In this document: piece by piece, positions 3,498 through 46,835 of the stretch
Layout: each line of letters starts with the position of its first letter
Numbering within the stretch: position 1 is the first letter of the stretch
Assembly (NCBI RefSeq): GCF_021869535.1
Contig: NW_026262679.1
Span: forward strand, 59,582,001 to 59,646,000
Source of the DNA: Mytilus californianus
Taxonomy: Eukaryota
Direction: 5' to 3'
Length of the DNA: 64,000 bases
Notes under the pieces: model-generated
What the model was told of the DNA's origin: nothing
The model's database searches: none
The model's input: the letters and a program-made list of their open reading frames with translations, nothing else
Translations under genes and position numbers: made by a program

Positions 3498-3526
3498 TTC
3501 TTGAAATACATGTAATTTGATTCGAG

Positions 3527-3568
3527 CGTCACTGATGAATCTTTTGTAAACGAAACGCGCATCTGGCG
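3527..3568 (+). ncRNA. Degenerate type I hammerhead ribozyme motif
   Basis: CGTCA-CTGATGA-ATCT(TTTGT)AAAC-GAAA-CGCGCA-TC-TGGCG: core intact, with mismatches in stems II and III. Confidence 0.6.
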
Positions 3569-6300: not shown

Positions 6301-6867
6301 CCCTAATGTACAGTTGATCTAAGACGTGTTTGGTTATTTAGTGTAGCCCTTTTCGTATTTATGGTCTCAAACGTTATATATTTTTGCCTTCAGAATTTGT
6401 GTTCTCGAGCGTACCCGTTGAGGATTATTCATGTTGTGCACACGGAGATCATATCTTCAGTTACTAACTTAGATAATGGTTTGTAAAATCAAAGTATTTC
6501 AGCGTTCTGAATTAGCACCCTAGAATGTGCTTTTCTGGATTTTCTGTCTTAGTAAAAAATATTTTCAAAAGCAAACGATATGTAAATGTTTCTCGCTGCA
6601 TTGAAGACCCATTGGTGGCCTTCGGCTGTTGTCTGCTCTATGATCGGGTTGTTGTCTCTTTGACAAAAAGTTAAAGATTGATAATATTTTTTTTGAGATG
6701 AAGTCTACGGGTCGCCAAGAATAAAAATAAGCATGAAATTCCAAATTCATTTTTCTGAAAGTGCTGAAAAAATCTGGTCGGCAAATCTGTAAACTGATAA
6801 AATAAAGAATACTGGCCTAAAAACATCATATTCATTTCCGAATATGTAGTAGACAAAAAACAGATAT

Positions 6868-7593
6868 GATGATAAATTTGAGGAACTTGAAAGCTCAACA
6901 TTAAATGACAAATAATGCTATTTCTATCCAAGCCTGCAAACAAATAAAGAGACAGATTATTCGAAATCTGCATAGTTGGCATGCGAGCAGCAATATCGCG
7001 TCATCTTACCAGTCCACCATTTAATCGTAAATGTTAACTTGATGAACGATAACTCATACATGACGTCTAATCATGTAAAAACCTTAAACAAAGATGTTAT
7101 GGTGCACAAAAAATCATGTAGCTGAAGGCGACATACAGCGGTAGTAATCAAGTGTTTTTTTTTTAACACGGATACACCAGTTACAATTCAAAATAAAGTT
7201 TTCTGGGACTTGATGTTAAATTTTGGTAGACGAGGACAGGAGGGGCTAAAGAGCTTGAAAAAGTCATCTTTCGGTAAACTCACAGATGAAAAGGGTAACA
7301 CTTACTACACAATGACCTATAACGAGGCCAATAAAACACACCACAAAGTAGATTCAGACAAGAGGTCCGTGTGTATTAAAAATGAGAAGATATTAACTGC
7401 CCAGTTGCAAGCTTGAATTTCTATTTATCTAAATTAATCAGTCCTAAATGTAATGCATTGTTTCAGCAGCCATTGCTTTATCCAAAACCAAAATATTGGT
7501 ATGCTTATAAAGCAATTTGGAAAAAAACTAAATGAGAATGTAAAGATATGTTTCCGGAAATAACAAATAAGTGTATCAAAGCACTTTATTTGA
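6868..7593 (+). mobile_element. Duplicate of Crypton exon 2 (exon 1 lost with block C)
   Basis: Copy of ~12985-13710 within block B; includes ORF 7210..7416 (LNFGRRGQEGLKSLKKSSF). Confidence 0.8.
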
Positions 7594-7779
7594 CTAAAAA
7601 CATATTAAAAAGAGTAATTAAATCTGTTATCTGCCTTTGAAAGATTAAAAAGAACTGCAACTGAAAAAACAGAAGAAAAGCAAAGTACATATTAAAAACA
7701 TGTCTGCAAGAAAACACTTAGTTTTTTTTTATCGAGTTGGAATAATAGTTCATATAAAAGTACCCCCAACACAACGAAA

Positions 7780-8023
7780 TTACTTTGGTTTCAGATATAA
7801 GTCTTTGGTTAGCATATATAGATGACGGCTGCGGATTTTGTCTTATCATATTCTTTGACACTTTCAGACTTTGCTACTAATTCTCGAGCCATTTTCCCAC
7901 ATACTCTGGTTAAAATCTGAAGAAAATCTTGTTCGTAGTTGGTATCTAATAATTTCTCAAATACGTGAAACAGACAGTACATGAGCCATCCTCCTTTACT
8001 TGGATCGGATATACCCAGTCTGC
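7780..8023 (-). pseudogene. Duplicated copy of caspase exon 4 with a 1-bp deletion
   Basis: Copy of 13897..14141 with TAT CAT ATG changed to TAT ATA TGC TAA, so it ends AVIYIC* (stop at 7809) instead of AVIYHMLTKDLYLKPK*. Confidence 0.85.
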
Positions 8024-8382
8024 CTGTAAACAAATAATATATACAAAAATAGTAGATGTACATAAAAGCATGTAAATAAATTAGTGGGTACCCGAAGGGT
8101 CAAAACCAGCTATAAAATTCGCGGTGAAATCAACTTTAGTATCAAAAGTAAATATTTGATGACAAAATATGTGTAGCTATCTGACAAATACAACATAAAC
8201 AAGTGAATCGACTATCATATTTTTGTCAGAAATGTGTCTTTATGCTTGGCACAGACTTTGCTTTTTGCAAAGATTACGCGTGATATGGGCACATTATGTA
8301 ATCATGTTTAATAATATAAACTATGTTTGACATGGTGTTCATAAAAGATTAACATTAGTAAATTTTTACTTGCTATACATAC

Positions 8383-8557
8383 CAGAGGAACAGGTAAACA
8401 TAACCAAAAAATCCTCATCACATGGTATTTGGAAAACAGATTCTTCGTTCATATTCTCTGTAGATGAAACTGCATTGCATTTTGCAGATTTATCTTGAAT
8501 ATCAAATCCTTTGTCAATATCACTAGTCTTTGAAACACCACCAACACATCGACATGC
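8383..8557 (-). pseudogene. Duplicated copy of caspase exon 3 (frame and splice sites intact)
   Basis: Same sequence and splice sites as 14557..14731, inside duplicated block 6665..9612. No upstream exons were duplicated with it. Confidence 0.85.
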
Positions 8558-11403
8558 CTATGAAAAAAAAATTTAGGAGGAAGATTTAATTCATTGTTGT
8601 CGCTATCTATGGTTAAAATGTTTAAGAAATTGACTGGTCGCAAAAGGGAAAAGGGAAAAGCTGAGCCTACCAGAATAATCAAAGAACATTTTTTTAATAC
8701 ACTTCTTTAGGGTTAAGTCCATAATAAGTAATAACATGACAATCTTGTTTATTATTCCTTCCGACGACATTATTTCTAATGATGGATATTTAAAGAAAAC
8801 GCATAATATCTAAAAATTTAGAAAAGAATACTAAGAAAAATGGGTAAAAAATTCTACTCTACGTTCACAATTTACCTAATAAGATCTATAAAAATACAAT
8901 TCATTAGACTGCATCAGTTATATACTTTTGTATGTAAAATTTGTTCATCTAATATATTATGCTTGTAAATTCCATTTGCGAATTTAGAAGAGAGGAATGA
9001 TTTACAAAATATTTTCAATCGACATCTCTTTACCCTATAAGTAGACGTACAATATACTTGTAGGGATATTCTATATATAAAAATAAATCATTTTCAGTTT
9101 GACATTTTTAACATCCAACTTGACAATTTTAAGTTCCAACTTGATTGTTCTCAGTTACTAATATGCAAAGTAGTATTTAAATTCCCTAGGAACAAAGTTC
9201 AGGACAACTATTTTTTATCTATATGGTTTACTTTGGCAGTTGCTAGTAAAACTAATGTTAAAATGTTTATGGTCATCAACATTTATATATAGTCTTTAAC
9301 ATATATCAATTCGGATGTTGGAGGTCCTTCGAGAAATTAAATATCATATACATATATTCGTTATATTCTATTAAAATTTAAAAACAAGCATTTTTGTTTA
9401 GGGGCCAGCTTTTCTCGCTGTGTTGAAGACCCATTGGTGACCTTCGGCTGTTTTCTGCGCTTCGGTCGGGTTGTTATCTCTATGACACATTCCCCATTTC
9501 CATTCTCAATTTTATTTGCATTGCACATGATCATGTTGTTCTCTGACTGTTAATGACGCCTTTATACTCAATCCATTGGATGTTGAATGTGAACTGATTG
9601 ACATTTTAGTCTAATACATAATACACATCCCTAATGTACAGTTGATCTAAGACGTGTTTGGTTATTTAGTGTAGCCCTTTTCGTATTTATGGTCTCAAAC
9701 GTTATATATTTTTGCCTTCAGAATTTGTGTTCTCGAGCGTACCCGTTGAGGATTATTCATGTTGTGCACACGGAAATCATATCTTCAGTTACTAACTTAG
9801 ATAATGGTTTGTAAAATCAAAGTATTTCAGCGTTCTGAATTAGCACCCTAGAATGTGCTTTTCTGGATTTTCTGTCTTAGTAAAAAATATTTTCAAAAGC
9901 AAACGATATGTAAATGTTTCTCGCTGCATTGAAGACCCATTGGTGGCCTTCGGCTGTTGTCTGCTCTATGATCGGGTTGTTGTCTCTTTGACACATTCCC
10001 CATTTCCATTCTCAATTTTATATCAGCAGTATTTAGTCAAGAAGAGTCCGAAAGGAATTTCTTTAACGTTCAGTTTGCCAGAGGATGTATGAATCGTTGT
10101 TTTTGATTAATTTTCTTAATTCATCTTCTGAGATTTTCTGCATGGAAAAAGGCATGCTTTGTGTCGAATGATTACTGGATGTATAATAGCCTCGGTAAGA
10201 TCAGCAGTGGTACCGACCCAGTGACAGTGAATAAAAAATCGATTTAAGATTAATTTGATATCTTAAAATGAACATGGATTGCGTATTCACAAAAACCTCT
10301 ATCAAAAAATTTCACAGTAAAACTTATTCTCCCTTTTCTTGCATCACCATTCATTGTATTAGAACAATCTTACAGTCAACTGCCTTCTACGTGATAAGGT
10401 TGTTTTTGTTATTCATGCACTATTCCATGTATATATATATTCATACATTAATTTACTTGTAATCTTAAATAAACAAAATTTTACGACATACATATAAATG
10501 ACAAAGGGAAACATGGTTAGAGGTTTTTGTTGTTAATGCATTCTATTCATGGAGAGATAATAACATTTTAGCATTTTATTATATCGTCTTCCGGGCCCAT
10601 TTCCGTTATTTGCAGCATCTAGCAAACATTTTATTTCGAATTATCAACATGCATGTTAGACACAGTTTTAAAGACAAACAATCAGGCATGCTAGAAATTA
10701 ATTGATTAACAATTGTTGGTTTAACAAAGAATAGCTCATGTACTCTAATCATGCTTATTTCATGTTGATAAAACATAGGTAATATTTTAGCAACATAAAC
10801 AGACAAATCACGAAACTTAATGTCTTTTATAGTTTGTGTTTCTTTTGTGTTAGTTTAAAATTGACGTTAAAGTTTTATCAGAAAAACTAAATTTGTTCAC
10901 TGAAGATTTAAAAAAAACCTTAAGTTATATATTATCTAGATCTATTTCAGATTTAGTTACACACATAATGTACAAACCGTACTCTGGTTGCATGGTAACT
11001 TGTATAACTTTAATAGCGGTCATACGATTTTGGATTGTATTAACAATAAAGACTTCATTCGTAGAACAATTGTTTACAATCACATATGACGTGCTTCTTT
11101 CGTTTTGTAAACAAAGCCATGCTCGAAAACCAATAAAATTTATTTGCACATGCGTATGTTGACTACTGCAGAAAAAATAGATTTTATCAAATTGGCATGC
11201 ATTTAATATATGTTATTAACTTAAAACACTTTCAAACTCTTAAATGACGCACATTTTGTTACTAATAAATAAACAACGACTACAATGTGTTACAATTCGC
11301 AATTGACATAATTGACCTAGATACGGCAACGTTCATGTTGGCTTTTCAAAACTCCTCCCTCTGAAAAACATATTTCATGGCGTCTGCTTGTTTACAGACA
11401 AAA

Positions 11404-13710
11404 TGGCATACGCACGGACAATACGATTGCAATTTGGGCTAAAAGTATATCACAGAGGACAACTTTATAAGATTATAGACCACCACAGACAAGAACACTC
11501 TGTAGTTCAATATGTGATTCAATCTTTGTCACCTGGACAGACCAACAGGGTATTTAGCCATGAAATTTACAATGCATCTGTCAATTCAATGTTTAATCGC
11601 CTAACAGAAGAAATCATATTCCAGTTTGAGCATGAGAGTTCACAATCAGATGATGAACTATCATCCATAACTTTGACTAAAGATGTACCAGAAGCAGTGT
11701 TAGAACCAAAACCATCCACAAAAAATCCAAGGTTCAAAGAAAAGCCAAGCAGAGAGCACATATATATGTTGTCTCAAGCTAGAGTTGAACAGACTACTAA
11801 GCAACAAAAAAGGAATGCGCCTTTTCAGGGGTAAATAAAATTCAAATACACAACAATATACTTAATAAAAGATTTTTAAAATAACAATATAAATAAGAAG
11901 ATGTGGTATGAGTGCCAAACATGTAAATTGACAAGTGACATGTGGACACAAATCAAAATAAAACCATGATAAATACAAATACGGGATACTTAAATCCCAT
12001 TCTAATCAATCAAATTCAACTTATTCATTTAAATGCTGTTAAAAGGAAAGTGAAGTACAGGTAACTAAGACTGTAGTACTGAAATGGCAAAATTGCTACA
12101 TAAATAATAAAATGGATTGACGCTAACAGGGAATCGAACACCATTCTCATATTAAAAAAAGGCGTTAGTACCAATATACCACCAATGTTTCTAATCCATT
12201 TACAAATGCAACAAGATCGTCACTCAGTTTATATTTTCATCGTCACGGAAAAAAAACCCATATTTTATGAACTGACAATGTATGCATGTTGTGTGTATAC
12301 TACAACTAGACTATTCAGAAAGCTCAACATGTTGATGAAAATTGTGAATTTCAGACAATGAGCCAATGACGTAATAAATTTGTTAATCTTAATCCTCTGA
12401 TGACACAAAAAATGACATGAATCAAATTCCATGGAAACATATTGTTGACCTCATAAATAAGGTTTTACACATCTACTTTAGCTGCCAGTATGTAAATAAC
12501 AAGACAATACTTAATAAACACTAAATTGTACTTGTACAATGTACATGTATGCCGGTGATGTTTAAGGGGAAGACAAAATTGCCACATTATTCACATTAAT
12601 AAGACCATTATTTTCTAATTTATTAGCTTACGTATTTCCGACCTGAATATGTTTGTGTATAAGTATTTTAAGTTGACAAAGTTTGAAAGTCACTTGTACA
12701 TGTATCAACCTAATATTGAGCGAACATTAATTTTGAAGAGACCATTCAAACTGCAAAATATTATGATACCAATATACGGTTAAAAAGTTAAAGATTGATA
12801 ATATTTTTTTTGAGATGAAGTCCACGGGTCGCCAAGAATAAAAATAAGCATGAAATTCCAAATTCATTTTTCTGAAAGTGCTGAAAAAATCTGGTCGGCA
12901 AATCTGTAAACTGATAAAATAAAGAATACTGGCCTAAAAACATCATATTCATTTCCGAATATGTAGTAGACAAAAAACAGATATGATGATAAATTTGAGG
13001 AACTTGAAAGCTCAACATTAAATGACAAATAATGCTATTTCTATCCAAGCCTGCAAACAAATAAAGAGACAGACTATTCGAAATCTGCATAGTTGGCATG
13101 CGAGCAGCAATATCGCGTCATCTTACCAGTCCACCATTTAATCGTAAATGTTAACTTGATGAACGATAACTCATACATGACGTCTAATCATGTAAAAACC
13201 TTAAACAAAGATGTTATGGTGCACAAAAAATCATGTAGCTGAAGGCGACATACAGCGGTAGTAATCAAGTGTTTTTTTTTAACACGGATACACCAGTTAC
13301 AATTCAAAATAAAGTTTTCTGGGACCTGATGTTAAATTTTGGTAGACGAGGACAGGAGGGGCTAAAGAGCTTGAAAAAGTCATCTTTCGGTAAACTCACA
13401 GATGAAAAGGGTAACACTTACTACACAATGACCTATAACGAGGCCAATAAAACACACCACAAAGTAGATTCAGACAAGAGGTCCGTGTGTATTAAAAATG
13501 AGAAGATATTAACTGTCCAGTTGCAAGCTTGAATTTCTATTTATCTAAATTAATCAGTCCTAAATGTAATGCATTGTTTCAGCAGCCATTGCTTTATCCA
13601 AAACCAAAATATTGGTATGCTTATAAAGCAATTTGGAAAAAAACTAAATGAGAATGTAAAGATATGTTTCCGGAAATAACAAATAAGTGTATCAAAGCAC
13701 TTTATTTGAC
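11404..13710 (+). mobile_element. Decayed Crypton-type (tyrosine recombinase, DUF3504/KCTD1-like) transposon gene, two exons
   Basis: Exon 1 ORF ends ...PRFKEKPSREHIYMLSQARVEQTTKQ, then after a frameshift GMRLFR G|gtaaat at ~11829. Exon 2 fragments read KFEELESSTLNDK*CYFYPSLQTNKETDYSKSA, VGMRAAISRHLTSPPFNR, NTDTPVTIQNKVFWDLMLNFGRRGQEGLKSLKKSSF, LFQQP...WY and TNKCIKA. Multiple stops and frameshifts. Confidence 0.8.
12118..12188 (-). pseudogene. tRNA-like relic (resembles tRNA-Gly) in the Crypton intron
   Basis: The reverse complement ACATTGGTGGTATATTGG...GGTGTTCGATTCCC has A-box- and B-box-like segments. It contains an internal T7 run and a broken acceptor stem. Confidence 0.3.
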
Positions 13711-13896
13711 TAAAAACATATTAAAAAGAGTAATTAAATCTGTTATCTGCCTTTGAAAGATTAAAAAGAACTGCAACTGAAAAAACAGAAGAAAAGCAAA
13801 GTACATATTAAAAACATGTCTGCAAGAAAACACTAAGTTTTTTTTTTATCGAGTTGGAATAATAGTTCATATAAAAGTACCACCAACACAACGAAA

Positions 13897-14141
13897 TTAC
13901 TTTGGTTTCAGATATAAGTCTTTGGTTAGCATATGATAGATGACGGCTGCGGATTTTGTCTTATCATATTCTTTGACACTTTCAGACTTTGCTACTAATT
14001 CTCGAGCCATTTTCCCACATACTCTGGTTAAAATCTGAAGAAAATCTTGTTCGTAGTTGGTATCTAATAATTTCTCAAATACGTGAAACAGACAGTACAT
14101 GAGCCATCCTCCTTTACTTGGATCGGATATACCCAGTCTGC
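13897..14141 (-). CDS. Caspase-3/7-like protease, coding exon 4 (p10 C-terminus, stop)
   Basis: Acceptor tttacag| at 14141, phase 1. Encodes (G)RLGISDPSKGGWLMYCLFHVF...DFLQILTRVCGKMA...HMLTKDLYLKPK*, matching the caspase 'GSWFI...DLL.ILTRV...SMLTK.LYF' pattern. The four exons total 993 nt, or 330 aa plus stop. Confidence 0.9.
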
Positions 14142-14556
14142 CTGTAAACAAATAATATATACAAAAATAGTAGATGTACATAAAAGCATGTAAATAAATT
14201 AGTGGGTACCCGAAGGGTCAAAACCAGCTATAAAATTCGCAGTGAAATCAACTTTAGTATCAAAAGTAAATATTTGATGACAAAATATGTGTAGCTATCT
14301 GACAAATACAACATAAACAAGTGAATCGACTATCATATTTTTGTAAAACATAAATTAAACCAATTTTTGTAAAGATTGAAAAGTAAACTAATTTGATGTA
14401 CAGAAATGTGTCTTTATGCTTGGCACAGACTTTGCTTTTTGCAAAGATTACGCGTGATATGGGCACATTATGTAATCATGTTTAATAATATAAACTATGT
14501 TTGACATGGTGTTCATAAAAGATTAACATTAGTAAATTTTTACTTGCTATACATAC

Positions 14557-14731
14557 CAGAGGAACAGGTAAACATAACCAAAAAATCCTCATCACATGGT
14601 ATTTGGAAAACAGATTCTTCGTTCATATTCTCTGTAGATGAAACTGCATTGCATTTTGCAGATTTATCTTGAATATCAAATCCTTTGTCAATATCACTAG
14701 TCTTTGAAACACCACCAACACATCGACATGC
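14557..14731 (-). CDS. Caspase-3/7-like protease, coding exon 3 (catalytic Cys, ACRC..., intersubunit linker, IPCDEDFL)
   Basis: 175 nt flanked by ttttcatag| and TCTG|gtatgt. Not in the ORF track in this frame. Manual translation gives ACRCVGGVSKTSDIDKGFDIQDKSAKCNAVSSTENMNEESVFQIPCDEDFLVMFTCSS(G), which completes Q|ACRC across the splice. Confidence 0.9.
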
Positions 14732-16929
14732 CTATGAAAAAAAAATTTAGGAGGAAGATTTAATTCATTGTTGTCGCTATCTATGGTTAAAATGTTTAAG
14801 AAATTGACTGGTCGCAAAAGGGAAAAGGGAAAAGCTGAGCCTACCAGAATAATCAAAGAACATTTTTTTAATACACTTCTTTAGGGTTAAGTCCATAATA
14901 AGTAATAACATGACAATCTTGTTTATTATTCCTTCCGACGATATTATTTCTAATGATGGATATTTAAAGAAAACGCATAATATCTAAAAATTTAGAATAG
15001 AATACTAAGAAAAATGGGTAAAAAATTCTACTCTACGTTCACAATTTACCTAATAAGATCTATAAAAATACAATTCAATAGACTGCATCAGTTATATACT
15101 TTTGTATGTAAAATTTGTTCATCTAATATATTATGCTTGTAAATTCCATTTGCGAATTTAGAAGAGAGGAATGATTTACAAAATATTTTCAATCGACATC
15201 TCTTTACCCTATAAGTAGACGTACAATATACTTGTAGGGATATTCTATATATAAAAATAAATCATTTTCAGTTTGACATTTTTAACATCCAACTTGACAA
15301 TTTTAAGTTCCAACTTGATTGTTCTCAGTTACTAATATGCAAAGTAGTATTTAAATTCCCTAGGAACAAAGTTCAGGACAACTATTTTTTATCTATATGG
15401 TTTACTTTGGCAGTTGCTAGTAAAACTAATGTTAAAATGTTTATGGTCATCAACATTTATATATAGTCTTTAACATATATCAATTCGGATGTTGGAGGTC
15501 CTTCGAGAAATTAAATATCATATACATATATTCGTTATATTCTATTAAAATTTAAAAACAAGCATTTTTGTTTAGGGGCCAGCTTTTCTCGCTGTGTTGA
15601 AGACCCATTGGTGGCCTTCGGCTGTTTTCTGCGCTTCGGTCGGGTTGTTATCTCTATGACACATTCCCCATTTCCATTCTCAATTTTATTTGCATTGCAC
15701 ATGATCATGTTGTTCTCTGACTGTTAATGACGCCTTTATACTCAATCCATTGGATGTTGAATGTGAACTGATTGACATTTTAGTCTTAGACACATGCTTT
15801 TGTATTATTTGTTATTTGGCTTTGAACTAGCTCTCAGTATTTGCAAGTACTCTGAGATATGTAATTTGTGTTTTTTTGTGAGGGTTTTAATGTGCTTTGT
15901 ATCGATCTGACGAGTTTAGCCCTTTCCATTGAGTTTTATAGTTTGTTCTTATGTTGTTCTGTTACACCACTGTCCCGGTTTAGGGGAGGGTTTGACGACA
16001 GCAAACATGTTAAATCCCGGCACTTTCTGTATGTGTCTGTCTCAAGTCAGGAGCCTGTAATGTCGAGGTTGTCGTTTGTTGTTATATATTATGTTTGTTT
16101 TTCGTGTATTGTTTTGTACATAATTCAGGCCGTGAGTTTTCTATAGTGTGAATTGTTTTACATTTGTCAATTCGGGGCCTTTTATAGCTTACTATGCGGT
16201 ATTGGATTTGCTCATTGTTGAAGGCTGTAAAGTGACCTCTAGTCTTTAACTCCTATGTCATTTGGTCTCTGCTGGAGAGTTGTCTCATTGGCAATCATAC
16301 CACATCTTCTTGTTTTTATATTTAACCAATTATTTAAAGTTTCTGAATAATTTTAATATCCTATCTGTATCTGTAATATTATGGAATATATGAATAGCCT
16401 ATCATAAGCAATAAGTCTTATTAAACATTGAATTAGCTACATCAGTATAAACGTTTGAGACAAAAGTCCAATATATGAGCCTTGGGTTACACCCACATTC
16501 AATGTTCCAAGTGTTGACTCTGAATTTTTAGAAGAATGTTCTGTCTTTAGTTTTCTTTGTTGTGTTTTGTATACTGTCTTTTTGGTCTTTTTCTTTTTCC
16601 GAAATTAAATTAGTTTTTTTGAATAAAGGAAATAGGACGATAATTTTGAAAATAAGCTGTAGAATTCACCATTATCCAGAGGGGGCGGGCCCTTTCCTAT
16701 AACATGGATATTTCGAAGTTCTCAGTGAACAGTTGTTCATATATGTCTATTTGCAATATAGTTTAACATTTGTTGGCGTATTTAATCTTTGACGAGTGCT
16801 TCAGCAAATTGCAGGATTCTTCCTCTGTTTTTTTTCATCAAAATATAAATCTAGACGTAAAATACCATCATCCGAAGAAGTAGATAAATTATAAAAAAAA
16901 TAGAAATTAGCATATCTTCATATTATTGA

Positions 16930-19900
16930 ACGCCACAGCTGTCTTATGTGGAACTCTGATATAACGTTATGTTGTTTTATTATTACTTGATGATATTTTG
17001 TCTTCACATAATATGGTTTTGACATTACGTAATGATGTTTTGATATAACTCAATATGGAATAGTCATTACTTAATGATATTTCGATATTACACGATATGG
17101 TTTCGTATTGACTTGATATAGTTATGTCATTACTTAATATGGTTTTGTCATTACTCAATGTGGTTTCACCATTATTTGATGTTGTTGTGTCATTAGGCAA
17201 TGTGGTTGTAACATTACTTGATGTGTATGTGACGTAACGTTATGTATTTGTTTCATTAAATGATTTGGTTTTATTATTTCGTAATGATGATTTGCCAATT
17301 CTTTATATGGCTTTAACATTACGTAATGATGTTTCAAAATTTGACGATTTTACACTTCATGATGTGTTTGTTTCAGTATTTGATGTGGTCCTATCATTCT
17401 TTGATGTGGTTATCACATTACTTGATGAGGTAAAAACACGTGACCAATTTGGAAAAACTAGTTCTATTTTTAAATAGATTTCCATGTTTCATGTGCCTTG
17501 GATGAGTGTGGCCATCCATCGAGTTAGAGATTAAATAAAGGTTTGGGTTACTGTTCGAGTTAAACTTTGCGTTAGTCTTCGATTTCGAGTTAGAATTCAA
17601 GCCATTATTAGAATTAAAGTTCTAGTTAGCATTGAGTTTCGAGTTGAACTTCGAGTTTGAGTCACATTTAAAGGTAGAGTTCTAGTTACAATTCGACTTC
17701 AACTTTGAATTTGAGTCACCTTTTGAGGTAGAATTTGAGTTAGACTCGAATTTGAGTCTCATATAGATTACGATTTCGAGTTGAAATTCGAGTTATCTAA
17801 TATGAGTTTGTATTTAAATTTTTTATTGCGGATCAAGGGCTTTTGCTCGTGCTTTCGAAAAGAGGGCTCAGGGTTATGCGTACAACAGATAATTATAAAC
17901 AATGTTACAGTATACAAAACACAACATAGAAATTGAAATAAAGTTAGATGTGGTGTGATTGCCAATGAGACAACTATCCATCAGAGTTTAAATGCAGTGG
18001 ATGTAAGCAATCATAGGCAACCGTACAGCCTTCAACACACCGTATAGTAGGCTACAAAAGGCCACCACGTGAAAATGTGAAACAGTTCAAACGAGAAAAC
18101 TAACGGTCTAATTTATAACTAAACAATCAACGAAATACAAATGTGAAACACATGAAACAACGACAACCATTGAACTACAGGCTCCTGACTTGGGGCAGGC
18201 ACATAAAGAAAGTGCACGTGGCGGACTGTAGTGTAACAGCACAGCATAAGAAATAAATGTAAAAAAACAGTTTCAATTGGCTTAAATAAATAGATCGGTA
18301 TGAATGGGTAATATAAATTCATCGGGATGATCTCGGGTGCTCCGGAAGGCACGTGTGGCACCCGTCGTGTTATTCGTGAAGGTAAAAACCCAGTGATTTG
18401 GTTTTATTTGGTAGTTCACATTCGAGGAAAAGATGACGGGATTGTGGTACGACAACTGGAACATATCCGTCGTCATCTGTGAAACAGATATTCAAAAAAG
18501 TTTGTTTTTTTCAATTAGTGGGAGGTATATCAGACAATGCAATTTATAAAAATAAAAGATCGATATTAGTATATGTTCAAATGATCATACACGCTAAAAA
18601 AATCGGAGAATTCTTATTTTATAGATTTGATGCTTTGTCGCTTAGTCCGATCCCCCCCATTTCCCTGTAACTTTAGTGTGAGTTTATTTAAAGTGTCTCA
18701 TTTGTTGACAATAAAGTAAAAGTCTTTTGATTTGTGTCGAGCCTCCGACATTAATGTAGCGGCAGTGAGACACACCAAACCTATATTCCGTCGTCGGTAG
18801 TGGCGTCAGCGTCTTAATCATTTAGATTGTTAGGTTTCTCGTTTGGATTGTTTTTACATTATTCATTTCGGGACCGTTTATAGCTTACTATATGGTATGG
18901 GTTTTGCTCATTGTTGAAGACCATACAGTCATATATAGTTGGTAACTTCTACGTCATTTGGTTTGTTGTTGAGAGTTTTCCTATTGGCAATCATACCACA
19001 TTTTCTTATTTTCATATATATTTTTTTTGCATTAAATATTCCGATTTAAACTGTTTTGACATGATAAATTTGTAAAACTCCATGAATTGTTATAAAACTT
19101 GTATAGGAGTTATTCTTCAAGATCAAGATAAAGCATCTACAGAAAAATATTTTTTTTAAATTTTGTTTTTACCAATAAATGTACCGATAAATGCAACATT
19201 ACGCTTTTACACTGACAGCAGCAATATCAGGCGAAACACAGGGTTCCGTGGGATCTTTTACGAATTTATTATCATACTGCTTCCATTTGAGAACTAGGGG
19301 AAAAACGGCAGGAACAAGTGGTTTGGGGATATTCCCCTTATGTCCGAAATGCTGTTAATTTTTTAGTACTTTTTTTGTTAGTTTTGTCTGCCGTTCCCCT
19401 TTTTCATACCAAATGACTCTGAACAACAACTCGAACTTTAATTTGAACTTTAACTCAATGGATAGCGATACTCATCCAAAGCACATTAAACAAATGACAT
19501 ATGGAAATAGGTTTAAAAATAGAACATATTTTTTTCCGAAATGGTCACGTGGTTTTACCTCATCAAGTAATGTGATAACCACATCAAAAATGACAGGACC
19601 ACATCAAATACTGAAACAAACACATCATGTAGTATAAGATTGTCAAATTTTGAAATATCATTACGAAATAATAAAACCACATCATGTAATGAAACAAATA
19701 CATTACGTTAAGTCACATAGACATCAAGTTATGTCAAAACCGCACTGCCTAATGACACAAACACATTAAATAATGGTGAAACCACATCGAGTAATGACAA
19801 AACCATATTACGTAATGACAAAACTATATCAAGTCAATACGAAACCATATCGTATAATATCGAAATATCATTAAGTAATGACTATTCCATATTGAGTTAT

Positions 19901-20015
19901 ATCAAACCATCATTACGTATTGTCAAAACCATATTATGTGAAGACAAAATATCATCAAGTAATGTTAAAAACAACATAACATATATCAGAGTTCCACTTA
20001 AGACAGCTGTGGCGT
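16930..20015. mobile_element. Foldback-like element with ~600-bp internally repetitive inverted arms (16930-17540 / 19430-20015), in caspase intron 2
   Basis: ACGCCACAGCTGTCTTATGTGGAACTCTGATAT at the left end matches the reverse complement of ATATCAGAGTTCCACTTAAGACAGCTGTGGCGT at the right end. The arms contain degenerate 21-bp periodic subrepeats. No TSD was identified and there is no transposase. Confidence 0.75.
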
Positions 20016-20376
20016 CCCATTATCTGCCTTTTATTTTTTACTAATAGTATTTTGTTGGTTGTTCCTCTAAAAAGATCCATAGAGTTAAGAAAAAAACTTC
20101 TTTGTATAAATGATCAAGTTATTTATCTTATTACAGTAAATGTGTAATTCAATCAAACATGTACGATGCCGATTTTCGCATTTTTATTAAGTCAATCACT
20201 AAGTGGTATCAGTTATCGAATTTAAGAAACTAAACCACGTTTTAGTTAAATTATCGAATTGTGACAATATAAGTAAGTATTGATATGTTGGCCAAATCTA
20301 TATATTTTCTCTTTTCATGGCCAAGTCAAATAGCTGCATTAATGTTTGATATAATAAACATTAAAATATGACATAC

Positions 20377-20582
20377 CTGAATAAAAAACATTTTAGGCTT
20401 TCCAACTAAATTTTTACATTCATCGTCACCAAAGTTGTGTAGTATATCTTCTGTCAACACAGTGCTGTCCTTAGTAAAAATTACGTGTTGTCTCTCGTTG
20501 TTACGTGTGGGAATTTCACAACCATGTGAGCTGATTATACACGTCATACAGTCATGATCCCTGCCTATTGAATTTCTTATAA
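20377..20582 (-). CDS. Caspase-3/7-like protease, coding exon 2 (catalytic His in SHG; ends KPKMFFIQ)
   Basis: 206 nt flanked by ttttgatag| and CAG|gtatgt. Encodes (V)IRNSIGRDHDCMTCIISSHGCE...KNLVGKPKMFFIQ. Phase 1 in and phase 0 out, matching the neighbouring exons. Confidence 0.92.
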
Positions 20583-21539
20583 CTATCAAAAGAAAAGAAT
20601 AATTAAAAGCTACAAGGATACTTGTTTTATTTTACAAATTGCAAGAGTAACCTTAAAAATATGTAAATGCACATCTGATTACCTTCTAACTTTAATACTT
20701 TATTTATGACAACACCAAACATTCCAAAAGAGAATGCATGCATAAAATACAATTCTTTATCAAGTGTACACTCCTGTGTTACTGCATTCAGAAAACTCCT
20801 GTACCAATTCAAAAATACGACAGTTATTTTTCATTCGTTCAGTTGGTTGATATAAGCGAGCGTTTGATTTATTCAGGTTTTATGGACCTCCCCCTTTTCA
20901 ATTTACCCTGGACTTTAGAATTTTTGTTAATATGTGTACCTTTTCACATACGAAACCAAAGCTCTTCTCGGAAACCGGACTTGCAGTACAAATAATGATC
21001 AAGTTGTCTACCTAAATGTTCGGTCAAAGTCGGTCATATGAATGCTTATATATTCGGTTTCAGAAATCAAATAAATATCCTTGGTACAGTTATGATAATT
21101 CAATTTAAAAGTCCACAAACTTGCTGATATTGCATTGTTTGGTATATTCTTAGGGTATCTGAATGGAAAATGTTTGCTGTAGAGTTGTCACATAATAAGA
21201 CGCACAAGACTATAATATATTGATGCTATTATATGCCAAGTATTTAGATTCTTTTTGGCAGTAACAAAACCTGATCTGCAAGGTATTCCATCTGTATGAC
21301 TCTATGCAATTTGCACGTCAATGTGTACTGTGTATGAAGTCGACAAGGAAAATAATCACTCGACTAAGAATTGTGTCGATAGGTATAGGGAACTTGACAT
21401 AGTGCATGCGGATGTGCCATGAAGTCACAGAAACATAATTCTAATCCCAAATGAAGGAATGGAAAGAAGCTACAACAAATTTGTAGATCAAGGATTATTT
21501 GGGTAAAATACAGACTAAGTTTGTTTTTGTTTTTGTTTA

Positions 21540-23200
21540 TGTGTCTTTTTGATCGAGTTAAGCCATTTCAATTGATATTTTATTGTGTGTCTTTTTATGT
21601 TGTAATGTTACACTACTGTTTCAGGTTATGGTGAAGATTGGTGCCTGATAAAACGTTTAAACCCGCTGCATTTGTATGCAACTGTCCTAAGTCAGGAGCC
21701 TGTTGTTCAGTGGTTTTCGTTTGTTGCATTGATGTGGTTCATAAGTGTTTCTCGTTTCTCGTTTTTTATAATATAGATTAGACCGTTGGTTTTCCTGTTT
21801 GAATTTTTACACTAGTCATTTTGGGGCTCTTTATAGCATGCTGTTCGGTGTGAGCCAAGGCTTCGTGTTGAAGGCCGTCCTCTCAGATCTGTACTTAGTG
21901 TCTTTTTGTTGTTTGGATGTACAAGTACCCGGCCACGTCCACTTGTAATTGTAGTATTCGTTCTTATGTTGTACTGTTACACCACTGTCCCAGGTTAGGG
22001 GGAGGGTTGGGATACCGCTAACCTGTTTAACCCCGCCAAATTCTGTATGTATGTGCCTGTCCCAAGTCAGGAGCCTGTAATTCAGTGGTTGTCGTTTGTT
22101 TCGGTTACATATTTGTTTTTCGTTAATTTTTTGGACATACATTAGGCCGTTAGTTTTCTCGTTTGAATTGTTTTACATTGTCATTTCGGGGCCTTTTATA
22201 GCTGACTGTGCGGTATGGGCTTTGCTCATTGTTGAAGGCCGTACGGTGACCTATAGTTGTTAATTTCTGTGTCATTTGGTCTCTTGTTGAGAGTTGTCTC
22301 ATTGGCAATCATACCACATCTTCTTTTTTTATATTTGACCTATAATTGTTTACGTTTTACACATTGTGACTTGGATGGATAGTTGTATCATTTGCACTCA
22401 TACCACATCTTCTTATTTATAAGTATATGTTTTATGTAGTGTTAGTCCTGTGTAATAGTGTTTATATATCTCAATGTATACGTTACGTTCGAGAATGTTA
22501 ACACTATAAAGACTTCATCAAATCTGGTTTGTTGATTGTGTCCTTTTTCCGATTGTGACGTTTTCACGGTTTATGGATTTGCATGGTGGGTGATTCATGC
22601 ATGCGAGTATCTCAGATCTATACTTTGTGTCTTTAGTGTTTTTGTCAGTTGTTTGTTTTGCTTTGTATCGATCTTACGAGTCCAGACCTTTTCAACTGTT
22701 TTTTTATAGTTTGTTCGTATGTTGTGAAGTTACAGTCATAGGTGGTCATAGCACCTTGTAAGATTTACACAAATGAATGATTATATATTCGGTATGAATT
22801 ATCAAATAAATATCCTCATAAAGATGTAAGTATAACACTAAGAGCAATACCCAGTTTAGGGAGAGTGCTGGACGCCCTCGGACATGTTTAACCCCGTCAC
22901 ATTCTTTATCTGCCTGTCCTAAGTTAAGAGCCTGTAATTCAGTGGTTGTCGTTTGTTGTTGTATATTAGATTTGTTTTACGTTCATTGTTTTGTAAATAA
23001 ATCAGGCCGTTAAGTTTCTTGTTTCTTGTTTGAATTGTGTTACATTTGTCATTACGGGGCCTTTTATATCTAGCTATACGGTATAGCTTTTGCTCATTGT
23101 TGAAGGTCGTACGTTGACCAATAGTTGTTTACTTCAATGTCGCTTGGTCTCTGGCTGAGAGTTGTCTCATTGGCAATCATATCACATCTTCTTATTTTCA
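21540..23200 (+). repeat. Cluster of high-copy mussel-type interspersed repeats (ending GAGAGTTGTCTCATTGGCAATCATACCACATCTTCTT)
   Basis: Several nested copies. The same family occurs at ~960-1255, 15840-16320, 17920-18200 (minus), 18830-19015, 26710-26835, 27200-27530, 36945-37200 (minus), 40800-41225 and 56260-56345. The superfamily is not determined. Confidence 0.8.
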
Positions 23201-23716
23201 TAGTTCAGGAGATTAAAATTGACCCCATCCTAAACTCCGAAACATACAATTGTACCAAAACAAAAACACAAAAGACTAACAAAGGCAGAGGATTCTGACT
23301 TGGCACAGGCGCAAAAATGCGGCGGGGTTAAACATATTTTGTGAAATCTAAACCCCCCCCTATACATCTAGCCAATGTGGAATAAGCAAAAACACAGCAA
23401 TACATATAGTAAAACACAGTTTAAAAGAAGTCTGAGTCCAATGTTAGAAGAAGTAACAGTAGAAACCAAGCATAATAACAATGATCAACATAAATTATTA
23501 AAGTACTTCTAGTAGTTACTGACATGTCACCTCCAGACCTCAATAAACTGATCAAAAACTTATGTCTTCATCATATGAAAATCGAACACAATTCCTCCCG
23601 TTAGGGAGTACCATGCCATCATAAAATATACGAGGAAAACATAACCCGTATCATGCCAACAACTGGTTTTAGAATAAATGTGTTTATTTCCGATGCAAAG
23701 ACCCTATGAGTATATC

Positions 23717-24230
23717 AACACGACCCCGCCATCTCAGGTGCTCCGGAAGAGTAAACAGATCCTGACCTACATGTGACACCCGCTTTGTTGCTCATGCTGT
23801 ACAAATCCGGTGGTAAGTCTTATTCGGTAGGTCACATTCGGAGAAAAGGGAACGGGATTGTAGTTACGACAATTGGAACATATCCGTTATCATCTGTGAA
23901 ACGGATATTCCATAACGGTCAACCAACTCGTGATGAGGTCCATAAAATTGACGAATGAATGATTTTAACTTTACCACTTGGAACTCTTGGTTTAATAGCT
24001 TCCTCGTGAGCAGCAACCCTCTATCAAGAATATCATGATAGGAAATACAAGCACTGGAATATCGTATCAACTGGGAGATATATACTCCGTATGCAGGCGC
24101 TGCTGGAATTTGCTACATAGAAATGGAAAGTTTACAATTGTGAAGCTGAAATCATCTCTTTTGTCGTAAATTTTGTTTTCATCCTATCCTCATTGTTTAT
24201 TTCTAGATGTAAGTCAAGAGATGAGACAGA
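23717..24230 (-). mobile_element. Penelope-like retroelement 3' fragment, inverted relative to 24760-25563
   Basis: Reverse complement of ~25050-25563; includes ORF 23864..24070 (IRYSSAC...HHELVDRYGISVSQM). Confidence 0.85.
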
Positions 24231-24759
24231 CTGTCGTCATTCACCATAAAATTGTCACAAAATTAGACAAATATATAGATGTCACTGCATAGTGAATATA
24301 ATTATCATTTACAACGGACAGATAACGGCTGATCTGCTCGTTATACCGTTAAAATAGCATCATACATCATGTATTGTGTTATAACCGTAAATAAGACCGA
24401 GTTGGGAAGGGCATTTCTCGACAATTGAGAGTTATATTTTATATAGCCTACCTGATCAATTAGTTGAAGGGCACAGGACGCTGATCATACGGATGAGCCA
24501 CAATCTCACAGCAGTACGATTTCGAATCCTGCTGATGAACATATAAAACTCATCAATGATATTTTGCTTATACTATGCATTAAATGCTTGATTTTGTTTA
24601 TTAAATCAACCTATCAATAGTTTTGATAACTCAACAAATTTTAACTTTTAAACAAAGTAATGGTTGAATAAGGCAAGATAAGAGAGGCCATAAATCAGAC
24701 ATCAACAACAATGCAAGCGACATTCTTTACTAGCATTTTAACCAGCATGATCATTCAAT

Positions 24760-25563
24760 TCTTTCTATGTGAATTAGGTATTGACAATTCACTTGGAAAC
24801 CCAACATATACACAAACGACAATTAGCAAGGAGGAAATTCTGGATTATTTAATTTATATGAGGCTTACTTCATTCAGGAACTTCTTAAGAAGACAAAAAT
24901 TAGAAAGAAGCTAGCAGTATCCTTTAACCTTACTTTCCGCTATATAGATGATGTTCTATCACTAAATAATTCAAAATTTTGTGACTATGTTGAACGCATC
25001 TATCCCATCGAACTTGATATAAAGGATACAACAGATACAGTTAAGTCGGCCTCATACCTTAACCTACATCTAGAAATTGAAAATGTGGGTCGCTTTAAAA
25101 CAAAGCTTTACTACAAAAGAGATGATTTCAGCTTCCCAATTGTGAACTTTCTATTTCTATGTAGCAACATTCCAGCAGCGCCTGCATACGGAGTATATAT
25201 CTCCCAGATGATACGATATTCCAGCGCTTGTCTTTCCTATAATGATTTCCTTGATAGAGGGTTGCTGCTCACGAGGAAGCTATTAAACCAAGAGTTCCAA
25301 GTGGTAAAGTTAAAATCATTCATTCGTCAATTTTATGGACCTCATCACGAGTTGGTTGACCGTTATGGAATATCCGTTTCACAGATGATAACGGATATGT
25401 TCCAATTGTCGTAACTACAATCCCGTTCCCTTTTCTCCGAATGTGACCTACCGAATAAGACTTACCACCGGATTTGTACTAGCATGAGCAACACGGTGAG
25501 TGCCAAATGTAGATCAGGATCTGTTTACCCTTCCGGAGCACCTGAGATGGCGGGGTCGTGTTG
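24760..25563 (+). mobile_element. Penelope-like retroelement RT fragment, internally deleted, with 3' tail
   Basis: ELGIDNSLGNPTYTQTTISKEEIL jumps at ~24846 to ...SFNLTFRYIDDVLSLNNSKFCDYVERIYPIELDIKDTTDT..SASYLNLHLEI...KRDDFSFPIVNF..LCSNIPAAPAYGVYISQMIRY. The RT YIDD motif is near 24943. Confidence 0.85.
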
Positions 25564-25784
25564 TTCATTCTTTAGTTTTCTTTGTTGTGTTTTGTGTACT
25601 GTTGTTTGTCCGATGGCCATGGCGTTGTCAGTTCATTTTCGACTTATGAGATTGAATGTCCCTTTAGTCTCTCTAAGCAAGTTTTGCTAGACAAAAGTAT
25701 CTGAAACTAAATTGATATGAGTCCGTATCAACAACAGTTAAGATAGGGTCAGGTAGTTTTTATGTATTTGATTAAATGATATAC

Positions 25785-26151
25785 CTTTCAGGTTTTGGAG
25801 CAGTTCCTCGCTAGAATTATTTTCTAACATCTTTATCTCAAATCCTAGTTGCTCGAACAGTTTCTTCATATTCTTACAGTCTAGGTCAGCAAATGGACGC
25901 TCGCTTTGCGCATCAAACTTACAATTAATTATGAATATGGCATATCCAATCTTACGACCGGTGAATTGGTAGCTATTACTGTTTCTCGTGTCTGATGAAA
26001 ATCTAGTGGTGTTTAAGTGTGCGTTTAGTTCCCTTTGCCTTGATGAAAAGCCGTAATTGTCGTTAAATTCTCCGGACGGGATTGAGGACCTGATGTAATC
26101 CTCATTTGTCCCAGAGATACTCTCTGGTTTTACTATGAAAGCCTGTTTCAT
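25785..26151 (-). CDS. Caspase-3/7-like protease, coding exon 1 (short prodomain and start of p20)
   Basis: ORF 25738..26151 reads MKQAF...GYAIFIINCKFDAQSERPFADLDCKNMKKLFEQLGFEI...LQNLK, matching the caspase N-terminal pattern (IIN..F....R.G...D...L...F..LGF.V). A phase-1 GT donor (AAAG|gtatat) lies at 25785/25784. An AG acceptor lies 1 nt before the ATG (tgtag|A ATG), so an upstream exon is likely. Confidence 0.9.
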
Positions 26152-26369
26152 TCTACAATAGAAATTGTCAAAAGTATATCATTAGGAGCAATATCTAGTT
26201 ATGATACAGCTGATAGATATTTTTAATGATAATTATTATGTAACGTGTAGTGGAATAATGTAAGATAACCCACATAAAGGGCAATTGACCTAGAAAAAAA
26301 GTTTCATCCTTTCCTCCCGAATTATGTTTTTCTATAAATGACAAATGAAAATTGGTGCAAATGTTTTTT

Positions 26370-28160: not shown

Positions 28161-29217
28161 TACCAACGGCATTAATCACCTAATTGCGTTAACTTCTAAC
28201 ATAAAATTTCTGATTAGGCAGAAAAAAAATGTGTTATACAGATTTACTTATCTTCTTATGAAATTAAATGTATGATGCAACATTGTTATATGCTTTGAAA
28301 ACGTCATTTACCTTCTAACAAGCTTCATTATACTGGAATCGTCGAACTGGCTTTCTGTAAAAACAGATGATATATGGTTAACATTTTGATTAAAAAAAAA
28401 CTTTAACAAAGTATGTTTGCATCATATCCTATGGGATTAACTTATTGTTGAGGGTCGTATGGTGGTTTATGATTGTGTAAATTCCTAGCGGATTGTTGTC
28501 TCATTAGCAATCATACCACGTTTTCTGATTTTTGTATTACATTTCCTATATCCTACCTTCTATATATTTCAATAGAATTCTGCGGTGTCACATGCTGACT
28601 GTGTGTACTAGTATCTTGAAAATACACGACGATACAAGAGTTATCGTTCATGTGATTCTACGATATAAGATATGTAAAATATTCAAAGTTAGTAAATGTA
28701 TTCATCATAGATACAGATACTCATGTTTTTTTTTCAAAGTAACAGACAGTATGTATGATATAAATATTACATAGTCCATCAGTGGCCTAAAATTTTATAT
28801 ATACGCTCAAAAGTTTAATATCGGGACTCGACATGAGCTCTCATCCAATATACAATTTACTGACCGTGTATATGTTACAGGGAATTTGTAAAATCAGGGA
28901 TTTTGTAAAATCACTGAAATTTCAGGGAATTTGTAAAATCACTGAACTGATTAGTGATTTTATAAAATCCCTGATTTTGACCAGTGATTTTACAAAATCC
29001 CTGAAATAATTAAGATCTGTTTTACAGATTCACTGATTGTTTTCAGGGAATTTGTAAAAATAATTTCATTCTTATTGATTGAAAATTTCTGTGAAAAAAG
29101 CCTACAGCAGTAACACTCAATAAGTTTGAGGTTAATCTGGCCTTTATTTTAATACTAAGTGAGCAGTTTTCATGCACTAAACAACTGACATACTGTAGAA
29201 AAATGTCTCAGGCATAG

Positions 29218-46509: not shown

Positions 46510-46835
46510 TCTAGGCCACTACAAGTAGAGGTTTTCTTCCCGAGGGTATCAACAGTCAAGTAGTCATCACTTCTGTGTTGACATGAATTATCATTGATAT
46601 GGTCATAATTATAAATTTACTGTTTACAAAATTTAAAACTTCGAAACACTAAGGATTTTCGACCCCAGGTATAGATTACCTTATCTGTAATTGGCAAAAC
46701 CTTTCGTAATTTTGGGTCCTCTTCAACATCGTTCTTTAATTGGGCTTTTGATTGAGCGTCACTGATGAGGCTTTCGTACTAAATGCGCGTCTGGTGTAAA
46801 ATGTTAAGCCTGGTATCTTTGATGAGTTTCATTAT
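46510..46835 (+). mobile_element. Retrozyme-like monomer (~330 bp) ending in a decayed hammerhead motif (46757-46797)
   Basis: GAGCGTCACTGATGAGGCTTTCGTACTAAATGCGCGTCTGGTG, followed by CCTGGTATCTTTGATGAGTTT as in the other copies. The body is homologous to the inverted copy at 26370-26706. Confidence 0.6.

What the first reader, a model, noticed from the sequence alone, without database searches (positions are those of the whole stretch)
13897..26151. Caspase with intact catalytic dyad but rewired substrate pocket (QACRC; SWR loop replaced)
Seen in the sequence: a clean 330-aa spliced ORF with H142 (SHG) and C193. The pentapeptide is QACRC rather than QACxG, followed by an extra segment before DKGFDIQD, a candidate cleavage site at D213. 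By manual alignment, the specificity loop GYYSWRN reads GRLGISD, so the Arg341 equivalent that binds P1-Asp in caspases (established) is Ser255, while the Arg179 (SER) and Gln283 equivalents remain. Inference: a non-Asp-specific or low-activity caspase, or a decoy/regulator, still kept intact (no stops in four exons over 12 kb of transposon-rich DNA).
Basis: partly seen in the sequence, partly recalled or inferred. Interest (0 to 1): 0.78.

Follow-up and report, generated by a model that had tools for sequence, protein, structure and literature searches.

The report
Mussel effector caspase lacking Arg341
This is a real, expressed and already annotated California-mussel caspase gene whose altered substrate pocket is not private to it: it is the hallmark of an old bivalve caspase clade that earlier mussel and oyster caspase surveys have partly described.

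Summary
The minus-strand GT-AG exon chain 26151..13897 gives a 330-aa caspase with His142, Cys193, QACRC, and Ser255 at the Arg341 place.

- **Already annotated.** The protein is identical to RefSeq XP_052098335.1, "caspase-7-like isoform X6" of Mytilus californianus.
- **Gene is longer.** Other isoforms add upstream coding exons at 28354-28312 and at 40030-39961 or 37714-37705.
- **Expressed.** Spliced RNA contigs from two studies confirm the last two junctions. They show no change in 420 coding bases against 7-10 changes in the 3'UTR.
- **Clade-wide trait.** Arg341-to-Ser/Cys/Gly is shared by a well supported clade of mussel, oyster, pearl-oyster and scallop effector caspases. In that clade Arg179, His237, Gly238, Gln283, Cys285 and a linker Asp (Asp206 here) stay invariant.
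- **Private or narrow traits.** QACRC is shared with several Mytilus paralogues. Only Trp340-to-Ile is private to this gene.
- **Constraint.** Against its collinear M. edulis counterpart, dN/dS is 0.43 (p20 0.40, p10 0.33).
- **Literature.** Papers from 2011, 2021 and 2024 already report Arg341 and pentapeptide variation in bivalve caspases.

Most likely it is a still-active, acid-directed protease with weakened or altered S1-S3 recognition. A decoy role is not excluded. The scan had already noted the partial 3' duplication on this window and other divergent caspases elsewhere in this genome.

The parts
39961..40030 (-). Alternative first coding exon A (ATG at 40030, second in-frame ATG at 39970, donor GT at 39960). 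Used by isoform X1 (368 aa).
   Evidence: tblastn of the P0053 N-terminus; sequence read
37705..37714 (-). Coding end of alternative first exon B (ATG CAA CCA G|GT), which gives the MQPE... start of isoform X4.
   Evidence: Pattern search; P0054 sequence
28312..28354 (-). It is conserved in the M. edulis counterpart.
25785..26152 (-). The exon begins at 26152 behind an AG acceptor; the internal ATG at 26151 starts isoform X6.
20377..20582 (-).
14557..14731 (-).
   Evidence: the RNA loose end at 14733 matches the exon 2 end
13897..14141 (-).
   Evidence: RNA joint 14140->14556
13497..13896 (-). 3'UTR covered by the spliced RNA contigs, carrying 7-10 substitutions plus small indels relative to the window.
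   Evidence: tables 3, 4 and 8
6665..9612 (-). 99.4-99.6% identical duplicate of 12782-15786, holding second copies of the last two exons (about 8557-8383 and 8023-7809). A 1-nt deletion opposite 13935 shifts the frame 12 codons before the normal stop. RefSeq isoforms X2/X3 end there (...VIYIC).

Best explanation
The interval holds the caspase-domain exons of an annotated and expressed Mytilus californianus effector-caspase gene (RefSeq 'caspase-7-like', isoforms X1-X6). The gene spans at least 40030-13897.

It belongs to an old clade of pteriomorphian bivalve effector caspases. The clade hallmark is an L3 loop reading A-W-S-D instead of S-W-R-N, a beta-hairpin insert after the catalytic His, and a QACRX pentapeptide. 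This gene sits in a fast-evolving Mytilus subclade with QACRC and a short linker, and has additionally replaced Trp340 by Ile.

Inferred mechanism:
- It is made as a zymogen and cut in the linker after the invariant Asp206 (SDID|K), and perhaps after Asp213.
- It then acts as a cysteine protease through His142/Cys193.
- Its S1 pocket still holds an acidic P1 through Arg85 (Arg179 equivalent) and Gln191 (Gln283 equivalent).
- Without the Arg341 clamp and with Asp next to it, P1 binding is weaker or looser, and P3/P2 preferences differ from DEVD-type caspases.

Shown here: gene structure, expression, fold, residue equivalences, clade membership and purifying selection. Inferred: activity, the processing site and the specificity.
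For: - **Gene model and identity:** exons and canonical splice sites; identity to XP_052098335.1.
- **Expression:** spliced RNA contigs from studies P1 and P2 confirm both 3' junctions. They show 0 differences in 420 coding nt against 7-10 in about 380 nt of 3'UTR.
- **Family and fold:** Pfam C14. AlphaFold model with mean pLDDT 81.9, above 90 over most of the domain. Best structural matches are caspase-7 and caspase-3, TM 0.9 by target.
- **Residue equivalences:**
- **Clade:** the 23-row clade lacking Arg341 has SH-aLRT 99, while neighbouring bivalve groups and canonical caspases keep Arg.
- **Conserved residues:** R85, H142, G143, Q191, C193, R194 and D206 are invariant or nearly so across 42-45 sequences.
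- **Linker motif:** the linker Asp lies in DEVD|M in oysters and in SEID|K or SEVD|E in mussels.
- **Selection:** dN/dS is 0.43 against the collinear M. edulis gene, which has the same exon structure.
- **Published activity:** DEVDase activity is reported for an oyster long-linker caspase-3/6/7 with QACRS (PMC11543851).
Against: - No biochemical data exist for this protein or for any relative verified to carry Ser341. I could not obtain the sequence of the assayed oyster enzyme.
- In mammalian caspases Arg341 is treated as essential for P1-Asp recognition. Its replacement by Lys in mouse caspase-12 is taken as a sign of a pseudo-enzyme (PMC11121540).
- This gene has also lost Trp340 and the pentapeptide Gly, both close to the substrate groove.
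- Omega of 0.43 is relaxed for an enzyme.
- No clade-wide compensating basic residue was found.
- The conserved linker Asp could be cut by another caspase, so it does not prove this enzyme's own specificity.
Confidence: 0.55

Rival explanations
1. Regulatory pseudo-enzyme. The protein keeps the fold and the dyad but has too little activity to matter as a protease. It would act by heterodimerising with, or competing against, active paralogues, as cFLIP-L does and as proposed for rodent caspase-12.
For: - Loss of Arg341, Trp340 and the pentapeptide Gly in one protein.
- Arg341Lys alone is taken to disable mouse caspase-12 (PMC11121540).
- The C-terminal strand MLTKDLYL, which forms the dimer interface in solved caspases (established knowledge), is highly conserved.
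- Many paralogues are available as partners.
- Evolution is relaxed, with omega 0.43.
Against: A scaffold has no need for His142, Gly143, Gln191, Cys193, Arg194 and Arg85 to stay invariant across the clade. Other mussel caspases that really are dead have lost these residues (PMC10967218).
Confidence: 0.25
2. Protease with a truly new P1 specificity, either non-acidic or Glu-preferring. Replacing the bulky Arg341 by Ser enlarges S1 and removes one positive charge.
For: Ser, Cys, Gly, Thr or Phe at position 341 and Asp at 342 are fixed across the clade. The authors of the M. coruscus survey also suggest broadened substrate recognition (PMC10967218).
Against: - Arg179 and Gln283, the other two P1-Asp ligands, are invariant.
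- The conserved linker site is an Asp in DEVD-like context.
- DEVDase activity is reported for an oyster long-linker relative, though its residue at 341 is unverified.
Confidence: 0.12
3. A young gene copy on its way to becoming a pseudogene, still open by chance.
For: - A long stem branch, and only 61% identity to the nearest relative.
- A partial duplicate of the 3' exons is already frameshifted.
- The locus is repeat-rich.
Against: - dN/dS is well below 1 over 343 codons, with pN 0.23 against pS 0.43.
- The exon structure is intact and conserved with M. edulis.
- Spliced transcripts are found in two studies, with no coding change but many UTR changes.
- All catalytic residues are kept.
Confidence: 0.05

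Closest known systems
Human caspase-7 and caspase-3 (e.g. PDB 1F1J, 4JR2, 4FDL)
   Same: Same fold (TM 0.9 by target) and short prodomain. His/Cys dyad, Gly238, Arg179 and Gln283 equivalents are kept. The linker Asp and the C-terminal MLTKxLY strand are also shared.
   Different: - Arg341 is Ser, Trp340 is Ile and Asn342 is Asp.
- The pentapeptide is QACRC, not QACRG.
- There is a 9-aa hairpin insert after SHG and a 7-aa insert after the pentapeptide.
- Identity is about 27-30%.
Bivalve 'caspase-3/7' group with QACRX (Vogeler et al. 2021, PMC7836458), and the 'novel caspase-3/6/7 with long inter-subunit linker' cluster of Bivalvia and Gastropoda (Wang et al. 2024, PMC11543851)
   Same: QACRX with a variable fifth residue and an intact His. 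The relatives recovered here from oysters, scallops and mussels carry long linkers. This gene nests among them.
   Different: The linker here is short, about 37 aa between the pentapeptide and FQIPC, against the 63-286 aa reported. The fifth residue is Cys and Trp340 is lost. Equating my clade with the published clusters is an inference from motifs and taxa, not from shared accession numbers.
Mytilus galloprovincialis caspase-3/7-4 (Romero et al. 2011, PMC3037946) and the expanded M. coruscus caspase-3/6/7 set (PMC10967218)
   Same: Mussel executioner caspases with an intact dyad in which Arg341 or other P1-Asp ligands are substituted. Their authors already inferred changed specificity.
   Different: Those papers do not report QACRC (no paper holds the string). 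They do not trace the change to one old clade and give no enzymology. Orthology to this gene was not tested.
Rodent caspase-12 (Arg341Lys) and cFLIP-L
   Same: Caspase-fold proteins whose altered active-site region goes with a modulatory role (PMC11121540).
   Different: cFLIP-L has lost the catalytic residues and caspase-12 belongs to the CARD-bearing inflammatory group. This protein keeps all catalytic residues and is an effector type. The likeness is functional analogy only.

Membership tests
Caspases (peptidase family C14A) | p20/p10 caspase fold | tested here: met
   Pfam PF00656 on three exon pieces. AlphaFold model with pLDDT above 90 over the domain. Foldseek best hits are caspase-7 and caspase-3, E 2e-23, TM 0.92 by target.
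Caspases (peptidase family C14A) | Catalytic His237/Cys285 dyad with Gly238 | tested here: met
   His142, Gly143 and Cys193 align to them and are invariant in 45 sequences.
Caspases (peptidase family C14A) | Pentapeptide QACXG | tested here: not met
   The pentapeptide is QACRC. The fifth residue is Cys here and in five Mytilus relatives; it is Ser, Glu or Gly in other clade members.
Caspases (peptidase family C14A) | P1-Asp pocket formed by Arg179, Gln283 and Arg341 | tested here: not met
   Arg85 and Gln191 are present, but position 341 is Ser255.
Caspases (peptidase family C14A) | Cleavage after Asp | not testable with these tools
   Only indirect evidence: the invariant linker Asp206 in a DEVD-like context across the clade.
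Pteriomorphian effector-caspase clade lacking Arg341 (as defined here) | Placement inside the clade on a tree rooted with vertebrate caspase-3/7 | tested here: met
   The 23-row clade has SH-aLRT 99. This gene pairs with M. edulis XP_071166087.1 (support 100) inside an 11-row mussel clade (support 97) (quick search, no bootstrap).
Pteriomorphian effector-caspase clade lacking Arg341 (as defined here) | L3 motif A-W-[SCGFT]-D followed by GGWL | tested here: inconclusive
   Ser-Asp and GGWL are present. Ala-Trp is replaced by Gly-Ile; the M. edulis relative has Gly-Met.
Pteriomorphian effector-caspase clade lacking Arg341 (as defined here) | Insert after SHG ending in a conserved His (His155) | tested here: met
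   The insert is 9 aa, and His155 is conserved in 22 of 23 clade members. It is predicted as a beta-hairpin, E143-147 and E152-158.
Long-linker caspase-3/6/7 cluster (PMC11543851) | Inter-subunit linker of 63-286 aa | tested here: not met
   There are about 37 aa between QACRC and FQIPC. The nearest mussel relatives P0008 and P0036 do have long linkers.
Pseudocaspases (cFLIP-like) | Loss of catalytic Cys and/or His | tested here: not met
   Both residues are present and invariant.

The most novel reading that the evidence does not exclude
The whole pteriomorphian clade with Ser (or Cys/Gly) at position 341 and Asp at 342 is a separate specificity class of caspases, kept across the four bivalve orders sampled. 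Examples would be enzymes that accept Glu as well as Asp at P1, or that reverse the P3 preference from acidic to basic. On this reading the gene here, which also lost Trp340, is an extreme derivative with a reshaped S2/S4 groove. No member verified to carry Ser341 has been profiled.
Probability: 0.25. Interest if true: 0.6.

Novelty: new member of a known kind. Interest (0 to 1): 0.3.

Why it matters
For this single gene, little changes. It is an annotated paralogue in a caspase family known to be expanded and variable in bivalves.

The useful result is at clade level. Loss of the Arg341 clamp, with every other catalytic and S1 residue held invariant, is an old and selected state shared by mussels, oysters, pearl oysters and scallops. 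It is not decay. That makes it a clean natural experiment on how far caspase P1/P3 recognition depends on Arg341.

It also warns against reading bivalve 'DEVDase' assays and apoptosis annotations as if these enzymes were caspase-3/7 equivalents.

Tried and rejected
- **Searching for the assayed oyster enzyme.** I looked for the sequence of CgCASP3/6/7-like6 (464 aa, QACRS) to check its residue 341. No supplements are held for that paper and it gives no accession. A third protein search with an oyster relative did not return it. The link between Ser341 and DEVDase activity therefore stays unverified.
- **Literature string search.** 'QACRC' occurs in no paper. Neither it nor the loop motifs occur in the M. 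coruscus supplements.
- **Compensating basic residue.** I scanned for columns conserved in the clade but not in canonical caspases. None is a conserved Arg or Lys. Arg/Lys251 predates the loss and is Thr in oysters. Arg153 in the hairpin is common but not universal. The stretch from the FLVMF strand to GGWL has exactly the canonical length, so there is no room for a register shift. A residue-level structural superposition could not be obtained from the tools.
- **Raw RNA-seq run X12.** It laid no reads, with only 6% of the run sampled. That is no test.
- **'caspase-1 [Crassostrea gigas]' (P0046).** I considered whether it is the published DEVDase Cgcaspase-1. The sizes do not fit (424 aa against about 34 kDa implied in PMC3923871), so I did not use it.
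- **Pseudogene reading.** Rejected on dN/dS, expression and conserved exon structure.
- **Both splice junctions in one read-laying run.** The span exceeds the 6,000-letter limit. The exon 2-3 junction therefore rests on the loose-end sequence rather than on a laid joint.
Full report
**1. What is in the sequence**

On the minus strand, four exons join into a 993-nt reading frame of 330 codons. They are 26151-25785, 20582-20377, 14731-14557 and 14141-13897, each bounded by AG and GT. The exon 1, 2 and 4 pieces each match Pfam Peptidase_C14.

HMMER alignments to solved structures place the protein nearest caspase-7, caspase-3, caspase-6 and a resurrected ancestral effector caspase. In those alignments 'grlgisd' lies opposite 'gyyswrs' with no gap between the preceding strand and the following G-x-W. 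Ser255 therefore stands at the Arg341 place and Ile254 at the Trp340 place (caspase-1 numbering). Arg85 and Gln191 match Arg179 and Gln283. There is a 9-residue insert directly after SHG and a 7-residue insert after the pentapeptide.

**2. The gene is annotated and longer than described**

A search of 1.84 billion representative proteins with the last-exon piece returned a 100% match. Its cluster holds six RefSeq isoforms of 'caspase-7-like [Mytilus californianus]'.

The other isoforms add upstream coding sequence:
- A 43-nt exon at 28354-28312.
- One of two alternative first exons, ending at 39961 (ATG at 40030 or 39970) or at 37705 (ATG at 37714).

The 43-nt exon is conserved in the M. edulis counterpart and resembles the N-terminal motif of the wider family. 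The longer forms are therefore probably the main products.

**3. Expression**

Three small runs from two studies hold about the exonic share of the 3' region. Their contigs lie on the last exon plus 3'UTR and skip exactly 14141-14556. They cover 14556-14733 and then run on into letters whose reverse complement is the end of exon 2.

Both junctions that create Q|ACRC and the G|RLGISD loop are thus seen in spliced RNA. The contigs run 538-766 nt further, enough to reach the upstream exons, but those letters were not shown.

The 420 coding bases covered carry no difference from the window in any run. The roughly 380 bases of 3'UTR carry 7-10 substitutions and small indels.

**4. The partial duplication**

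The stretch 12782-15786 recurs at 6665-9612 with 99.4-99.6% identity. The copy carries second versions of the last two exons.

A 1-nt deletion opposite 13935 shifts the frame 12 codons before the stop. RefSeq isoforms X2/X3 end with that shifted tail. The RNA contigs carry the duplicate's state at three 3'UTR sites but not the deletion. So the intact frame is what these animals transcribe. I could not test whether the duplicate is real or an assembly effect.

**5. The family**

Relatives fall into a distinct bivalve group. Profile scores are 280-570 bits for them against about 170 for vertebrate caspase-7.

A maximum-likelihood tree of 42 sequences, rooted on vertebrate caspase-3/7, gives a 23-sequence clade with SH-aLRT 99. 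This was a quick search without bootstrap. The clade contains proteins of Mytilus, Crassostrea, Saccostrea, Pinctada, Pecten, Ylistrum and Argopecten.

- **Position 341.** In this clade it is Ser (19), Cys, Gly, Phe or Thr, and never Arg. Position 342 is Asp or Asn.
- **Neighbouring groups.** Neighbouring bivalve groups (among them the scallop proteins with QACRE) and all canonical caspases keep Arg, apart from a small Tegillarca-type group with Gly. That gives two changes on the tree.
- **Invariant residues.** Across all 42-45 sequences Arg179, His237, Gly238, Gln283, Cys285, Arg286 and a linker Asp (Asp206 here) are invariant or nearly so.
- **Linker motif.** That Asp sits in DEVD|M in oysters and in SEID|K, SEVD|E or SDID|K in mussels.
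- **QACRC.** It is shared with five Mytilus relatives.
- **Trp340.** Only its loss is special to this gene. The M. edulis partner has Met there.
- **No compensation.** No clade-wide new basic residue that could replace Arg341 was found.

**6. Selection**

The nearest relative is M. edulis XP_071166087.1, at 61% identity. It has the same exon structure. Collinear non-coding similarity of about 70-80% extends upstream of the gene, so it is probably the positional counterpart.

Nei-Gojobori estimates over 343 codons:

| Region | dN/dS |
|---|---|
| Whole (dN 0.275, dS 0.646) | 0.43 |
| p20 | 0.40 |
| p10 | 0.33 |
| Linker | 0.65 |

Protein distance between the two is 0.71. Three other pairs of family members compared between the M. 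edulis group and M. californianus or M. coruscus lie at 0.18-0.40. The gene therefore evolves fast but under constraint. It is not decaying.

**7. Structure**

An AlphaFold model built with 45 aligned relatives has mean pLDDT 81.9, and above 90 through most of the domain including the L3 region. The first 50 residues and the linker are of low confidence. The post-His insert is predicted as a beta-hairpin.

Foldseek finds caspase-7 and caspase-3 first, with TM 0.9 by target. The tools give no coordinates, so the S1 pocket could not be inspected residue by residue.

**8. What is already published**

- Romero et al. 2011 reported that Arg341 is substituted in M. galloprovincialis caspase-3/7-4 while the dyad is intact. 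They inferred changed specificity (PMC3037946).
- Vogeler et al. [quoted passage not shown]
- The 2024 M. coruscus survey states that the Arg and Gln ligands of P1-Asp are deleted or mutated in many of 47 caspases. It calls such variation ubiquitous in bivalves (PMC10967218).
- Wang et al. 2024 described a bivalve and gastropod caspase-3/6/7 cluster with long linkers. They showed DEVDase activity of one oyster member with QACRS (PMC11543851). I could not confirm that this enzyme has Ser at 341.
- A 2024 review treats Arg341Lys in mouse caspase-12 as a mark of a pseudo-enzyme (PMC11121540).

**9. Reading**

The identity of the feature is secure. It is an expressed, constrained member of an old bivalve effector-caspase clade in which absence of Arg341 is the norm.

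For the mechanism I favour a still-active, acid-directed protease (0.55). It would be activated by cleavage after Asp206, with a weaker P1 clamp and changed P3/P2 preferences. The reason is that selection has held the dyad, the oxyanion Gly, Arg179, Gln283 and a DEVD-like linker site in place throughout the clade.

| Alternative reading | Confidence |
|---|---|
| Regulatory pseudo-enzyme | 0.25 |
| New P1 specificity | 0.12 |
| Decaying copy | 0.05 |

**10. Verdict**

Novelty is that of a new member of a known kind, because the gene is annotated and the class of change is in the literature. This analysis adds three things:
- The Arg341 loss maps to one well supported clade across four bivalve orders.
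- The invariant processing Asp is D206 rather than D213.
- Only the Trp340 loss is private to this gene.

Interest is 0.3.

Noticed in passing
window 6665-9612 versus 12782-15786: Near-identical (99.4-99.6%) duplicate of the gene's 3' part, with a 52-bp indel in the intron and a 1-nt deletion that frameshifts the second copy of the last exon. RefSeq isoforms X2/X3 use it. RNA contigs from other animals carry the duplicate's 3'UTR states but not the deletion. Whether it is a real tandem duplication or an assembly effect is open.
   Followed up: partly
window 23716-24232 versus 25563-25044, and 16930-17293 versus 20015-19653: Two pairs of inverted repeat copies at about 93% identity inside the introns. 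The first pair carries the same roughly 50-aa ORF fragment in opposite orientation. They look like young transposon insertions.
   Followed up: no
window 30942-32196 (+): Two adjoining ORFs, one with a weak integrase-core match (rve, below the Pfam cut-off) and one with a SCAND3-like zinc-finger match (E 1.7e-13). This is probably a transposon remnant, on the opposite strand, inside the caspase gene's long 5' intron.
   Followed up: no
window 49058-49215, 46505-46798, 39623-39704, 3513-3608; L001 14825-15290: A short repeat family present at several places in the window also sits in an intron of the M. edulis counterpart gene.
   Followed up: no
L001 5641-6472 and 9729-10025 versus window 40491-39730: The M. 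edulis locus holds two regions similar to the first-exon region of the M. californianus gene. This echoes the two alternative first exons found in the window (40030-39961 and 37714-37705).
   Followed up: no
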